This document shows, piece by piece, positions 8,729-62,495 of a stretch of 64,000 nucleotides of DNA. The notes below the pieces were generated by a model that worked only from the letters and a program-made list of their open reading frames with translations, ran no database searches and had not been told where the DNA came from. The first letter of the stretch is position 1; each line of letters starts with the position of its first letter. The position numbers and the translations under genes were made by a program. Origin of the DNA: Raja brachyura (taxonomy: Eukaryota); assembly GCA_963514005.1 (NCBI GenBank), contig OY740795.1, positions 930,001 to 994,000 of the forward strand, written 5' to 3'.

Positions 8729-9169
8729 ATGTTCTCCCACATTCTTATGATAATATGCACAGCGTTCGGTAAGTATCGCGGTGCCTTTTCCCTGTTGTGT
8801 TTTGTGCCACGTTTGCAGCTTCCCTACTCAATGCTGAACACCATTTACCAACATTTACTTTTCAGGGGATATTCGTGGAGACTCGGTAACGCAGCCGGAA
8901 GCCAAGTTAAGTGTGGCTCAAAGAAATACAGTAAAAATACAGTGCAGCTACACGACAAGTGCCAGCAACCCTGACCTATATTGGTACCGACAGCAAGCAG
9001 ATCAGGCTCTGCAGTTTATTTTGTACCGGGATAACAGCAAAAGACAAGAAGCGGATTTTGCAAAGGAGAGGTTCGCGGCTGATCAGGCCAACGAAGGAGG
9101 GAATATCCCATTGACAATCACACAAGCAAAGCTTCAGGACTCCGGCCTGTATCTCTGCGCACTAAGTCT
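8729..9169 (+). CDS. TCR alpha/delta-type variable segment V1 (leader exon 8729-8768, V exon 8866-9169)
   Basis: Leader MFSHILMIICTAF+G with GTAAGT donor; 97-nt intron ending TTTCAG; V exon GDIRG/DSVTQ..VKIQCSY..LYWYRQ..LTI...DSGLYLCALS, open and in frame, with both Cys and the Trp. Confidence 0.93.
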
Positions 9170-9208
9170 CACAGTGATTCAACATTGAGCAGTTGCTCAA
9201 CAAAAAGC
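9170..9208 (+). other. 23-bp-spacer recombination signal sequence of V1
   Basis: Heptamer CACAGTG (9170-9176), 23-nt spacer, nonamer ACAAAAAGC (9200-9208). Confidence 0.95.
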
Positions 9209-9810
9209 TCAAAAAACAATCACAACCGCAAACCGCAACCTTCCAGTTCCAACAAAAGGCTCCTCCGCGTTAGGTATCAACCTCAGCTGTGCAAGGTCTT
9301 TGGTTTCATGAAACGAGTCTAAGCGAAACACAAATCACCCCCCTCGTCTCACATCAAACTCCAGCCCAGCAGATGTCACACGCAGCCGTAGGTTACCGCT
9401 TGACGGACTCAAATCGAAACGAGAAATATCTGTTGCCGATGAAATCACAGAGCACTATACCGAAAATGGCAACGAAAAGTTCCTTTGAAAAGTTGCTCTA
9501 TGCGCCAGTTGCTAGCATGAGAGTGGAAACAGGAACTATATTGACGTTTAGTTAGAATCATGGCTATGGCGGGAATGGATCGATATGGATCACGTGCAGT
9601 CGGATCCGATTATTTTTCCGGTTGCAGTACAGTTTATTGCCAGGTGTACCGAGGTACAGTGAAAATATTTTGGCGTGTGCATTCTAGTCAGCGGATTCCA
9701 ATACTCGATTACAATTGAGACATTTACAGTGTGCAGATACACGTGAAGGGAAAATAACATTTAGTTCAAGGTAAAGCCAGCAGAATCTGGTCAAGGATAA
9801 TCGGAGAGCA

Positions 9811-58596: not shown

Positions 58597-59050
58597 ATAG
58601 AAACATAGAAATTAGGTGCAGGAGTAGGCCATTCGGCCCTTCGAGCCTGCACCGCCATTCAATATGATCATGGCTGATCATCCAACTCAGTATCCCGTAC
58701 CTGCCTTCTCCCCATACCCTCTGATCCCCTTAGCCACACGGGCCACATCTAACTCCCTCTTAAATATAGCCAATGAACTGGCCTCAACTACCCTCTGTGG
58801 CAGAGACCCACCACTCTCTGTGTGAAAAAAGTCCTTCTCATCTCGGTCCTAAAGGATTTCCCGCTTATCCTTAAGCTGTGACCCCTTGTCCTGGACCTCC
58901 CCAACATCGGGAACAATCTTCCTGCATCTAGCCTGTCCAACCCCTTAAGAATTTTGTACGTTTCTATAAGATCGCCTCTCAATCTCCTAAATTCTGGAGA
59001 GTATAAACCGAGTCTATGCAGTCTTTGTTCATAAGACAGTCCTGACATCC
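58597..59050 (-). mobile_element. CR1 3' fragment with CAGGAC on both sides
   Basis: ORF2 C-terminus, 3' UTR and CATAGAAA tail; CAGGAC at 58591-58596 and 59051-59056. Confidence 0.9.
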
Positions 59051-60301
59051 CAGGACTGCTTTCTGCGTGTGGAATGTAAGAATAAGGGGCAAGCCATTTA
59101 GAACGGAGACGAGGAAACACTTTTTCACACAGAGAGTTGTGTGTCTGTCTCAGATGGCGGTGGAGGCCAGTTCTCTGGATACTTCAAGTGTGAGCTAGAT
59201 AGGGCACCTAAAGATAACGGAGTCAGGGGATATGGGGAGAAGGCAGGAACGAGTACTGATTAGGGATGATCAACAATGAATGGCGGTGCTGGCTCGAAGG
59301 GCGAATGGCCTACTCCTGCACCTATTGTCTATTTTCTATTTCTACTGGTCGGATGATTCAGTTGCCTGCTAACTGCTGGCAAGAAACTGTCCCTGAATCT
59401 GGATTAGTTTTTCATGTTCGGCATAGACATTGTGGGCGGAGGACCACATCAGGCACACCACCCTTTCCATATTACATATAAATTGGCAACTCAGATCAAT
59501 ACGATGTAACAGTCGCTTAATTGTCGAATCGGCATATTTGCAAAAGGATAGGGGTCTCTCAGGTCGCGAACCATTGCCTCCACTTAGGCATGTAGAATAC
59601 TTTGGACAATGCGGCTCCCAAATACTCCCAGTCCCTGACTAATTGAAGGCATGCCAGTATCTATATAGGCCCCTTGATCGTCCGATAAGCATCTCCGCCT
59701 TGCCAGATAATCGGTGCGGCAAAACGACCAAGCAACGTTGTTTAGCGATTCCCTGAAGTACACATGGCCGTAGGATCGGAGTTCTCTCCCTCATCATAGC
59801 TCTTGGTTGGAAAGGATGTCAAGGGTTATGAGGAATCAAAGAAACATAGAAACAGAAAATATGTGCATGACTACGCCACTCCGTCCTTCGAGCCAGCACC
59901 GCCATTCATTATGATCACGACTGATCATCCAAAATCAGTACCAGTTCCTGCTTTCCCCCCATATTCCGTCAGCCCTAATAGCGATATCTAACTCTCTCTG
60001 TTGAAAACATCCAGTGCATTGGCCTCCATTGCCTTCTTTGGCAGAGAACTCCACAGAATCACAACTATCCGAGTGAAAACGTTTTTCTTCATCTCAGTCC
60101 TAAATGGGCTACCGCTTATTCTTTACTGTGACACCTTTGTTCTGGGCTTCCGCAACATCGTGAACATTTGTCCTGCCTCTAGCCTGTCCAATCCCTTAAG
60201 AATTGTATATGTTTCTATGATCCCCTCTAATCCTTCTAAATTCCAGTGAATGCAAGCCCATTCGACAATTTAACCTCGTCATTTGATTGTTTTCCAGGAA
60301 T

Positions 60302-62495
60302 ATTCATGCGCCTGGTAATGGACCTGTCTTAGAATTTTATTATTCAATTCTTGCAACTTTCGGTGTTCCAGCTAAAATGCGATTTAACTAGAGGGCAACG
60401 AAGGCCTTCATATATGGTTGTCTTTTTCTTTTTTTGTTATTTATCGAGCGTTTCTTTACGAATTATGCAGAAACAAATTGCTCAATTATTTGTTCTCTCT
60501 TGTGTTTCTGAAAAATATCAATGCAATCAAGTCTCGGAAAGCAGGGGAAACGCTTATGTTTTTGCGAGCACAGCTATAGATCTGCCAACTGCTGTGCACG
60601 GGACTCGAGAGGCTTTTTTTCTGGGGGGGGGTAAATGGCAGGTTTTCATTGTTGTCAGGGAGAATTTCGTCGTACAACAAGGTTATGACGTAGAGGAAAT
60701 CCCGTTCTGTCATCCGTTCGTATTTTTTTTTCAACGCGTTGCTGGTCTATTGAATCCCCGGATTTGAAAGTCGCGGCTCAAAGTCAAGGCCTTAAAAATC
60801 ACGGATCGCAAGTTAAGGACAAAACAAAATGTATGTAGGACGTGTGTTTCACATGTTATCTAGTTTCTGGTGTAATTTAATTTTAATCTGATGATGCGAA
60901 ATAAATTCATTATGCCCCGATATTGGCAACATGATAATTATCCGTATTGTGTAATTCTCTATCCATGATCACTATTTTCATGCTAAATATCTGACTAAAA
61001 ACTTCCACAATTCATACAGATCGGTCATGGCTACCGCCATCTTCAACATGGCGGCCGCCAATTGACATGGCGGCGGCGATGACCGATCTGTTTGTATGTC
61101 TGTCCGCCTCGATCACAGCTTTTGAGTTGTCAATAGAAAAACAATAAGGAACAAGATGCTAATTTCCTGGTATGAAGAGGACCATAACTATGTTCATACT
61201 GAAGACCTGAAAGTGAATTAGGTAAATATTAAAGTTTTTATGCCTTATCTAATGGGATAAATTAGAGGTTTGATTTATTAAATCACAACATTTTTAAACA
61301 TTCCAACAGGTTGGTCTATCAGATGTGTTGTGAGTTGGTGTTGCTTTATATTTTGACATGCAGAATGCTCTCTCCCATGTACGCCTTACTCTCAACACTT
61401 TCATGATTATCTACGGAACTCGGCATCGCCAAAAAACATCTCTAACGCGTCATTCATCCCATAACCAACATGTGTTGAAATACGTCAAAATATTACAGTT
61501 CTGTTTTAGGCGGCCATGGACTCGTATTCTGTGAGCGACCGTTATGGTTTGTGTCGCTCCCTTCTTCGGATAAATTGCTGACAATAACGCTGTTGGACGT
61601 ATGAACTTTCAAATAGCCCGCGTGTCCGGGTAAAGTGTCACGTGGACGCATAGAGTAATCACTGGGATCACTCCAGGAGTCGGATCCAATATTCTTACCC
61701 CGCAAGACACATGCAGGGTAAACGGTGAACTATTCATAGTGTGTTATTCCAATTGCATTATTTGATGTCCAATGCATTCAATGCTTATCATTTGTTCGTT
61801 TGATGTGTTAAGTGATACATGGGATCTCATATAAACCATAACTATTGATATGAATAAGAAATATATTATTTAATTGTAATGCCGGCAACTCGCGTGTGCG
61901 AGGAGCGGTCAATGTAAAGTAAAACGCGTGCGGTTTCAATTAGATAAACTCATCTCAGGATAATGTAACGGGGTGCCTAATCATTACTGTTCTCTCCAAC
62001 AATCGTTCACGCCACCNNNNNNNNNNNNNNNNNNNNNNNNNNNNNNNNNNNNNNNNNNNNNNNNNNNNNNNNNNNNNNNNNNNNNNNNNNNNNNNNNNNN
62101 NNNNNNNNNNNNNNNNNNNNNNNNNNNNNNNNNNNNNNNNNNNNNNNNNNNNNNNNNNNNNNNNNNNNNNNNNNNNNNNNNNNNNNNNNNNNNNNNNNNN
62201 NNNNNNNNNNNNNNNNNNNNNNNNNNNNNNNNNNNNNNNNNACCTGGTGACGATTGTAATTCTCTCGCAAGGAAGATGCGGCCTCTCCAAATGCTACCTG
62301 GTATTTATGGCGGTGGCGGATATCCTGGTCATTGTCACTGCCGTTATCTGATGCCGACCTCGGGTCATTTACCTCAACTCCACGTTGCTGTCCACCATCC
62401 CGGCGTGCAGTCTCATTATTCTGCTCACCTGGGCTTCCGTCAGGTTCACGGTCGCGTTCACCTTCGATCGGTTCGTGGCCATTTGTTGCCAGAAA
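60302..62495 (+). pseudogene. GPR139/GPR142-like GPCR pseudogene, copy 4
   Basis: Exon 1 (60302-60371) has ATG>ATT and donor GT>CT; exon 2 has a TGA at 62349-62351 and 9-nt and 12-nt deletions, and is cut off after [11 protein letters not shown] by CR1 sequence. Confidence 0.92.

What the first reader, a model, noticed from the sequence alone, without database searches (positions are those of the whole stretch)
8729..62495. TCR V gene segments interleaved with an expanding family of orphan GPR139-like GPCR genes
Seen: three RSS-bearing V segments and four two-exon GPCR genes alternate on one strand (V1-G1-G2-G3-V2-V3-G4psi), and three of the GPCRs look intact. Established: unrelated genes lie in mammalian TCR loci (trypsinogens in TRB, olfactory receptors at the 5' end of TRA/TRD). 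I do not recall a described case of GPR139-like receptors within a V array, but I cannot search the literature. Inference: if J and C lie downstream in the same orientation, RAG deletional joining of V1 would excise G1-G4, whereas use of V2 or V3 would keep G1-G3 and bring G3 close to the TCR enhancer. GPCR content and expression could then vary between T-cell clones according to V choice.
Basis: partly seen in the sequence, partly recalled or inferred. Interest (0 to 1): 0.9.

Follow-up and report, generated by a model that had tools for sequence, protein, structure and literature searches.

The report
GPCR genes interleaved with skate TCR V segments
In a skate genome, T-cell-receptor V gene segments and genes of a large shark-and-ray-specific family of GPR139-related receptors sit together in one repeatedly duplicated unit; the layout is real and apparently undescribed, but nothing yet shows that the receptors have anything to do with T cells.

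Summary
The order on the + strand is V1-G1-G2-G3-V2-V3-G4psi. V1 and V3 are complete TRDV3-type V segments: split leader, open V exon, canonical 23-spacer RSS. V2 has an open V exon but no leader, a CACGGCG heptamer and a 22-nt spacer. G2 and G3 are intact two-exon class A GPCR genes. G1 looks intact, but its exon 2 acceptor lies in an assembly gap. G4psi is a multiply broken pseudogene.

The receptors are under purifying selection (dN/dS about 0.13). In a relative about 2.4% diverged, G3 exon 2 shows only two changes, both synonymous.

They belong to a large elasmobranch family whose nearest solved relative is GPR139, but they are not its ortholog.

V and GPCR duplicated together as one cassette. 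In horn shark, similar V models share a chromosome with most family members, and their accession numbers interleave (indirect evidence).

I read the receptors as passenger genes co-amplified within the TCR alpha/delta V array, like trypsinogens in TRB. The idea that V choice changes GPCR content or expression in T-cell clones is untested, because no RNA data were available.

First readers of this scan noted the same pattern in four other windows of this genome.

The parts
8729..8768 (+). V1 leader exon (MFSHILMIICTAF + 1 nt), donor GTAAGT
8866..9169 (+). V1 V exon, open, TRDV3-type V-set domain (C23, W41, YLC)
9170..9208 (+). V1 RSS: CACAGTG, 23-nt spacer, ACAAAAAGC
16114..16183 (+). G1 exon 1 (ATG, 23 codons + 1 nt), donor GT
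17730..17962 (.). Assembly gap covering the G1 exon 2 acceptor and first codons; not filled
17963..18873 (+). G1 exon 2, readable part, open to the stop; Pfam 7tm_1
26272..26341 (+). G2 exon 1
28126..29042 (+). G2 exon 2 (AG acceptor, open to the stop); gene intact, 328 aa
43416..43485 (+). G3 exon 1
44978..45885 (+). G3 exon 2; gene intact, 325 aa; only 2 synonymous differences in organism B
50602..50905 (+). V2 V exon, open, V-set; no leader found, so probably non-functional
50906..50943 (+). V2 RSS-like site: CACGGCG, 22-nt spacer, ACAAAAACC
57451..57490 (+). V3 leader exon
57587..57890 (+). V3 V exon, open, 84% aa identical to V1
57891..57929 (+). V3 RSS: CACAGTG, 23-nt spacer, ACAAAAATC
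60302..60371 (+). G4psi exon 1 remnant (ATG changed to ATT, donor GT changed to CT)
62242..62495 (+). G4psi exon 2 remnant (9-nt deletion, in-frame TGA, cut off by a LINE); the gap 62017-62241 lies just before it
7080..10184 (+). V-bearing part of the V+GPCR cassette; paralogous to 55636-58951 at 86-92% identity, with collinear matches continuing into G1/G4psi
15770..20041 (+). G1 unit, a tandem duplicate of the G2 unit 25934-30218 (intron 85%, exon 2 plus 3' flank 94%)

Best explanation
This is a real stretch of the V region of a skate TCR alpha/delta locus. Its unit of tandem duplication carries one TRDV3-type V segment and one gene of an elasmobranch-specific family of GPR139-related class A GPCRs.

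Shown here:
- V1 and V3 have everything a rearranging V segment needs.
- G2 and G3 (and probably G1) are intact genes kept under purifying selection.
- V1-G1 and V3-G4psi are copies of one cassette, and G1/G2 is a further recent duplication.

Inferred:
- The receptors are passenger genes with their own, probably non-lymphoid, function. They were co-amplified with V segments by the unequal-crossover dynamics of the array, as trypsinogen genes were in TRB.
- If the V segments join by deletion to D/J/C downstream, the GPCR genes between the chosen V and the J are lost on that allele in that T cell. I expect this to have no consequence, because the genes are not needed there.
For: - V anatomy and RSS placement.
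- V type: human TRDV3 and TCR alpha are the best solved matches. V1 is 58% identical to Latimeria 'TRDV3'. Profile hits are named TRDV3 in many vertebrates.
- P0121, which is 81% identical to V1, is a V-(D)-J joined sequence ending FGGGTKLTVL. V segments of this type are therefore used.
- GPCR gene structure.
- Purifying selection between paralogs: G1-G2 has 11 synonymous and 5 non-synonymous changes, omega 0.13. G1/2 against G3 also gives omega 0.13.
- Purifying selection between organisms: in organism B, G3 exon 2 has 2 differences in 908 bp, both synonymous. Intron and flanks have 60 in 2466 bp (Fisher p 1.6e-6).
- Cassette and tandem duplication.
- Family size and range: 1949 hits, and the top 120 are all sharks, skates and rays.
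- Several subfamilies each hold both sharks and batoids, so the family predates their split.
- Horn shark: two germline TRDV3-like V models lie on the 59,489,666-bp chromosome that carries 30 of the 44 horn-shark family members listed. Their accessions (XP_067869828, XP_067869968) fall between GPCR accessions XP_067869824, 869841, 869934, 869936 and 870064.
- Precedent: trypsinogen genes lie inside TRB in human, axolotl and newt (PMC8945572, PMC12698447).
Against: - No expression data of any kind. The 'passenger, non-lymphoid' part is a default assumption, not a result.
- D, J and C segments are outside the window. Their presence and orientation rest on unchecked scan notes.
- The horn-shark interleaving assumes that accession order follows gene order. 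Near-identical paralogs do have close numbers, but this is not proof.
- If the association is conserved over roughly 300 million years, it could reflect a functional tie rather than inertia.
- For G1-G2, synonymous divergence (0.054) is below flank and intron divergence (about 0.10-0.16). Gene conversion could therefore contribute to their similarity.
Confidence: 0.6

Rival explanations
1. Functional coupling. V(D)J recombination changes which GPR139-like genes a T-cell clone keeps, or brings one near the TCR enhancer. Receptor content or expression would then differ between clones according to V choice.
For: The gene order makes this geometrically possible if D/J/C lie downstream, as scan notes suggest. 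The receptors are functional genes. The V-GPCR association may be old.
Against: There is no evidence of expression in lymphoid cells, and no RNA run holds G3. The other allele keeps the genes. Family members also lie on other chromosomes: 14 of 44 horn-shark hits. The trypsinogen/TRB precedent shows that embedding needs no functional tie.
Confidence: 0.08
2. The V segments here are orphon-like relics in what is mainly a GPCR cluster. They are not working members of the TCR repertoire.
For: V2 lacks a leader and has a poor heptamer and a 22-nt spacer. A scan note reports a broken C-delta-like exon 13 kb downstream (unchecked). No J or D RSS lies in the window.
Against: V1 and V3 have an intact leader, splice sites, open frame and canonical 23-RSS. 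Their 17 amino-acid differences cluster in CDR1 and CDR2. A close homolog occurs in a V-(D)-J joined sequence.
Confidence: 0.12
3. The receptor family is a so-far unrecognised chemosensory (for example amino-acid-sensing) repertoire of elasmobranchs, which have very few classical odorant receptors. Its presence in the V array would be a by-product of both families expanding by tandem duplication. This is compatible with the best explanation and specifies the receptors' own function.
For: The family is large and lineage-specific, sits in tandem arrays, and includes pseudogenes. Its nearest solved relative, GPR139, is known from established literature to respond to aromatic amino acids; the relationship to GPR139 is shown. 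The next-best single-sequence match is an olfactory receptor, OR52, at 1.4e-4.
Against: Omega of 0.13 is low for a fast-evolving chemoreceptor family. There is no Pfam 7tm_4 match. The catshark sensory paper found no GPCR among the 50 genes most specific to its 'brain & olfactory epithelium' library (PMC11979771). No expression data exist.
Confidence: 0.2
4. Assembly artefact: V-bearing and GPCR-bearing sequences were joined wrongly across gaps or repeats.
For: There are five gaps in the finding, and the window is rich in LINE fragments. The short-read contigs laid do not bridge a V and a GPCR.
Against: Two independent copies of the cassette show the same collinear V-to-GPCR order. The flanks of three gaps are collinear with paralogs. 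V and GPCR alternate on both sides of the untestable gaps. First readers noted the same pattern in other windows. Horn-shark accession order agrees.
Confidence: 0.03

Closest known systems
Trypsinogen (PRSS) genes embedded in the TCR beta locus
   Same: Unrelated protein-coding genes sit inside a rearranging TCR locus. They are tandemly duplicated, conserved across distant vertebrates, and are excised in T cells that use upstream V segments (PMC8945572, PMC12698447).
   Different: Trypsinogens form one or two blocks at fixed places (upstream of TRBV1, and between TRBV29-1 and TRBD1). Here the foreign gene alternates with V segments and belongs to the duplication unit itself. The locus is alpha/delta and the family is a GPCR.
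Olfactory receptor genes at the 5' border of the mammalian TRA/TRD locus (OR10G3 and neighbours)
   Same: Class A GPCR genes lie next to alpha/delta V segments (PMC8945572).
   Different: Those are classical ORs (single coding exon, Pfam 7tm_4) at the edge of the locus. The skate genes have two coding exons, match only 7tm_1, are GPR139-related, and lie among the V segments.
GPR139 / GPR142 (orphan class A receptors)
   Same: GPR139 is the best solved relative, at 1.1e-16 over the whole length. Shared features are GxPAN(L/I)(V/L)T(I/V)xILS in TM1, DR(F/Y)xAxC in TM3, and an N-x-x-x-Y motif in TM7 that lacks the usual proline.
   Different: The profile score is only 64 bits. The nearest non-elasmobranch proteins (salamander, coelacanth, teleost, all named GPR139) are 28-32% identical. 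The skate family has dozens of copies per genome rather than one. The window's copies have Arg where GPR139 and most family members have Trp 6.48.
Elasmobranch antigen receptor complex (IgH clusters linked to TCR alpha/delta)
   Same: Same chromosomal neighbourhood, with TCR alpha/delta-type V exons scattered among other gene clusters (PMC12227049).
   Different: That study examined gene models only for Ig, TCR and PSMB5. It does not mention GPCR genes.

Membership tests
Rearranging TCR alpha/delta V gene segment (TRDV3 lineage) | V-set domain with conserved Cys23, Trp41 and Y-x-C104 | tested here: met
   Pfam V-set E 1e-17, 2e-10 and 2e-17 for V1, V2 and V3. The residues are visible in the alignment. 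The best solved hits are TRDV3 and TCR alpha, and profile hits are named TRDV3.
Rearranging TCR alpha/delta V gene segment (TRDV3 lineage) | Split leader: a short hydrophobic exon and a phase-1 intron before the V exon | tested here: met
   Met for V1 (8729-8768) and V3 (57451-57490). Not met for V2: no candidate within 3 kb, and a LINE sits upstream.
Rearranging TCR alpha/delta V gene segment (TRDV3 lineage) | RSS with a 23-nt spacer directly 3' of the V exon | tested here: met
   V1 and V3 have CACAGTG-23-ACAAAAA(G/T)C. V2 has CACGGCG-22-ACAAAAACC. These are the only three sites in the window; shuffles gave 0.8.
Rearranging TCR alpha/delta V gene segment (TRDV3 lineage) | Use in rearranged transcripts, and linkage to D/J/C | not testable with these tools
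   Indirect only. P0121, 81% identical to V1, is V-(D)-J joined. D/J/C downstream is known only from unchecked scan notes.
GPR139/GPR142 subfamily of class A GPCRs | Rhodopsin-type seven-helix receptor whose closest characterised relative is GPR139 | tested here: met
   Pfam 7tm_1 at about 1e-13. The family profile gives GPR139 1.1e-16, against 2e-10 for the next family.
GPR139/GPR142 subfamily of class A GPCRs | Orthology to vertebrate GPR139 (one-to-one, high identity) | tested here: not met
   28-32% identity to salamander, coelacanth and teleost proteins named GPR139. The family has dozens of paralogs per elasmobranch genome. No tree with bona fide GPR139 and GPR142 was built.
GPR139/GPR142 subfamily of class A GPCRs | Trp 6.48 in TM6 (LWAP in GPR139) | tested here: not met
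   The family consensus is LLWxT (Trp kept, Pro lost). G1-G3 and their batoid subclade have LLR(L/I)T.
GPR139/GPR142 subfamily of class A GPCRs | Activation by aromatic amino acids | not testable with these tools
   Needs a receptor assay.
Non-antigen-receptor genes embedded in a TCR locus (trypsinogen-in-TRB type) | Unrelated intact protein-coding genes lying between V segments of one locus | tested here: met
   G1-G3 lie between V1 and V2 and are under purifying selection.
Non-antigen-receptor genes embedded in a TCR locus (trypsinogen-in-TRB type) | Arrangement conserved in other species | tested here: inconclusive
   In horn shark, V models and most GPCRs share one chromosome and their accession numbers interleave.
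Vertebrate odorant receptor family | Match to the OR profile (Pfam 7tm_4) and a single coding exon | tested here: not met
   Only 7tm_1 was reported at E up to 0.01. The coding region is split into two exons.

The most novel reading that the evidence does not exclude
The TCR alpha/delta V array and the GPR139-like family have been tied together since before sharks and rays split, and the tie is functional. The receptors would be transcribed in T-lineage cells (for example from or alongside V promoters). V(D)J deletion would then give each clone a different receptor complement, a second, recombination-dependent layer of clonal diversity.
Probability: 0.07. Interest if true: 0.9.

Novelty: new variant of a known kind. 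Interest (0 to 1): 0.55.

Why it matters
Foreign genes inside antigen-receptor loci are known, but only as fixed blocks. Here the foreign gene is part of the repeating unit, so each family's copy number is linked to the other's. Selection for more receptors would add V segments, and the reverse.

The result also flags a family of dozens of genes per genome, conserved and under selection across sharks and rays. That family has no described function and is currently hidden under an automatic 'GPR139' label.

If the receptors prove to be chemosensory, they could help explain how animals with almost no classical odorant receptors smell. If they prove to be lymphoid, the finding would be far more unusual.

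Either way, anyone annotating elasmobranch TCR loci should expect these genes among the V segments.

Tried and rejected
I could not read gene neighbourhoods in other elasmobranch genomes.
- The RNA search for G3 found no RNA holder. The runs laid are flat, DNA-like contigs, so nothing can be said about expression.
- Logan-derived family proteins (P0017, P0061, P0081, P0111) start inside exon 2. They are unspliced DNA calls, not transcripts.
- Long gene models of the family were checked for a fused V-set domain as a sign of adjacency. None was found: the extensions had no domain, or Hemopexin, or TRIM_CC.
- NCBIfam gave nothing, and Pfam gave no OR-type profile.
- The literature searches were negative.
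- The supplement with locus coordinates for PMC12227049 is not held.
- No leader was found for V2. No 12-spacer RSS, J segment or further V remnant was found in the window.
- The spliced (joined-exon) proteins were not built or searched. Exon 2 ORFs were used by reference, and exon 1 was located by tblastn only.
- No N stretch was filled. For G1 and G4psi I compared only the readable flanks with G2.

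
Full report
**What is in the window**

The window is repeat-rich vertebrate DNA with many LINE fragments. These carry reverse transcriptase, an AP-type endonuclease and an esterase-type ORF1.

**The V segments**

- All three V exons are open and match Pfam V-set.
- V1 and V3 each have a 40-nt leader exon (MFSHILMIIC...) that ends one base into a codon with a GTAAGT donor. A roughly 100-nt intron and an AG acceptor follow.
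- Both have a V exon with the usual Cys23, Trp41 and YLC104, then CACAGTG, 23 nt, and ACAAAAAGC or ACAAAAATC.
- A scan of both strands for heptamer-spacer-nonamer sites found only three. Each starts at the first base after a V exon. Shuffled sequence gave 0.8 per window.
- V2 is different. Its V exon is open, but the heptamer is CACGGCG and the spacer is 22 nt. No hydrophobic leader with a phase-1 donor exists within 3 kb, and a LINE 3' end lies about 120 bp upstream. V2 is probably not functional.
- The best solved matches for all three are human TRDV3 and TCR alpha chains.
- V1 is 58% identical to a coelacanth protein named TRDV3. A profile of the V segments finds proteins named TRDV3 in turtles, platypus and many mammals.
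- One database protein, P0121, is 81% identical to V1 and continues through a long CDR3 into FGGGTKLTVL. V segments of this type therefore do rearrange.
- V1 and V3 differ at 17 of 100 residues. Eight of these lie in CDR1 and CDR2, and dN/dS is 0.74. This is usual for V paralogs.

**The receptor genes**

- tblastn with family members showed that each gene has a short first exon (MHAPGNGPVFA...GVP, 23 codons plus one base). A second exon carries the rest.
- G2 (26272-26341, 28126-29042) and G3 (43416-43485, 44978-45885) have ATG, GT, AG and an open frame.
- G1 has a good exon 1 and donor, and an open exon 2 from base 17963. The acceptor and first codons lie in the gap 17730-17962, so its integrity cannot be confirmed.
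- G4psi has lost its start codon and donor. It also has a 9-nt deletion and an in-frame TGA, and a LINE cuts it off at 62495.
Exon 2 ORFs were used by reference.

**The gaps**

- The readable flanks of the G1 and G4psi gaps align, in the same order and orientation, with G2's intron and exon 2. In G2 the corresponding interval is a short pyrimidine-rich low-complexity tract.
- The flanks of the gap at 14074-14698 match the V3-G4psi cassette in collinear order.
- The two gaps at 33137-33686 lie in repeats and cannot be tested. V and GPCR genes alternate on both sides of them.
- No gap was filled.

**Are the receptors real genes?**

- G1 and G2 differ by 11 synonymous and 5 non-synonymous changes (omega 0.13). 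G1 and G2 against G3 also give omega 0.13, at dS about 1.3.
- Six DNA-like public runs hold G3: two with all sampled words, and four from a second organism with 65% of them.
- When laid on 43000-46800, the second organism's contigs cover the gene. They differ at 60 of about 2466 intron and flank positions, but at only two of 908 positions in exon 2.
- Both exon 2 changes are third-position synonymous changes (Fisher p 1.6e-6).
- The genes are therefore under purifying selection.

**What family are they?**

- Pfam reports only the general rhodopsin-type profile.
- The 302-aa exon 2 product has 1949 database relatives. The best 120 are all from sharks, skates and rays, and nearly all are auto-named 'probable G-protein coupled receptor 139'. 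The closest is 90% identical, from Leucoraja erinacea.
- A profile of 34 members hits solved GPR139 at 1.1e-16 over its full length. The next family, CCR2, scores 2e-10.
- The alignment shows shared TM1 and TM3 motifs and a TM7 N-x-x-x-Y that lacks proline in both.
- A search of 1.84 billion representatives found about 105 clusters below 1e-30. After that come full-length proteins of only 28-32% identity, from salamanders, coelacanth and a teleost.
- So this is a GPR139-related but separate, elasmobranch-expanded family.
- A tree shows several subfamilies that each contain both sharks and batoids. The window's genes fall in a well-supported clade with shark members at its base and a batoid expansion. 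G1/G2 sit next to a little-skate gene and G3 next to a thorny-skate gene.
- The window's copies and their batoid subclade have Arg or Lys where most members and GPR139 have Trp 6.48.

**How V and GPCR came to alternate**

- Self-comparison shows that 7080-10184 (V1 and flanks) matches 55636-58951 (V3 and flanks) at 86-92% identity.
- Further collinear matches run through the spacer into G1 and G4psi (13762-14071 with 59051-59333, 15185-15477 with 59801-60084, 16783-17318 with 61364-61894, 17963-18234 with 62245-62495).
- G1 and G2 form a 10.2-kb tandem duplicate.
- The duplication unit is therefore a V-plus-GPCR cassette, later broken up by LINE insertions.

**Is it conserved?**

- The V profile found two germline V models of Heterodontus francisci on a 59,489,666-bp chromosome. 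The same chromosome carries 30 of the 44 horn-shark family members listed.
- Their accessions, XP_067869828 and XP_067869968, fall between GPCR accessions XP_067869824, 869841, 869934, 869936 and 870064.
- Near-identical paralogs have close accession numbers, which suggests the numbers follow gene order. This remains an assumption.
- First readers of this scan noted the same interleaving 866, 309 and 197 kb upstream and on another scaffold of this genome. They also noted TCR delta-like D/J/C elements 13-19 kb beyond the window's end. I could not check these notes.

**Literature**

- No paper in the searchable library mentions GPR139 together with sharks, skates or TCR loci.
- The 2025 description of the elasmobranch antigen receptor complex looked only for Ig, TCR and PSMB5 genes.
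- Known parallels are the trypsinogen genes inside TRB, conserved from newt to human, and OR10G3 at the 5' border of TRA/TRD.

**Verdict**

The most likely reading is co-amplification. Functional GPR139-related genes ride in the tandem-duplication unit of a TCR alpha/delta V array.

The proposal that V choice shapes receptor content or expression of T-cell clones is logically possible. It has no supporting data, because no RNA evidence could be obtained. The same logic holds for ordinary passenger genes in other TCR loci.

The arrangement itself appears to be undescribed, and the receptor family has no described function.

Noticed in passing
window 18601-18790, 28770-28960, 45610-45800 (TM6 of G1-G3): G1-G3 and a batoid subclade (P0002, P0006, P0012, P0017; Lys in P0001) carry Arg at the position of Trp 6.48. 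Most family members and GPR139 keep Trp there. The change is conserved under purifying selection, which suggests altered function rather than decay.
   Followed up: partly
window 2545-6917, minus strand: An apparently full-length LINE lies in an AT-rich stretch. It has an 887-aa open ORF2 with endonuclease and reverse transcriptase domains, and upstream coiled-coil ORF1-like ORFs (5778-6134, 6168-6917). It may be a young or active element.
   Followed up: partly
window 44397-44777 (G3 intron) and 46048-46174: Short elements with extreme word depth (up to about 2.4e5, against about 5 for unique sequence) in all four runs of both organisms. These are very high-copy SINE-like repeats.
   Followed up: no
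P0121 (database protein, no locus): A V-(D)-J joined TCR chain fragment, 81% identical to V1, with a 15-residue CDR3 and an FGGGTKLTVL J. The long CDR3 suggests D usage, that is, a delta chain.
   Followed up: partly
window 16107-16113, 26265-26271, 60295-60301: A polypyrimidine tract plus AG (ttgttctccag) lies 3-4 nt before the ATG of G1 and G2, and at the matching place in G4psi. This hints at an upstream non-coding 5' exon that was not located. G3 lacks the motif.
   Followed up: no
window 53183-53653, minus strand: A 156-aa ORF (…GETKRRLGDRFAEHLRSVRNH…LIFRLGSLHPSGMN) with no Pfam match. From memory it resembles the GIY-YIG nuclease part of Penelope-like elements. It lies in the window's most GC-rich stretch.
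   Followed up: no
window 217-766, 48370-49395, 51341-51848: Four copies of the same LINE 3' end at 87-95% identity, two of them in direct tandem at 48370-49395 between G3 and V2.
   Followed up: no
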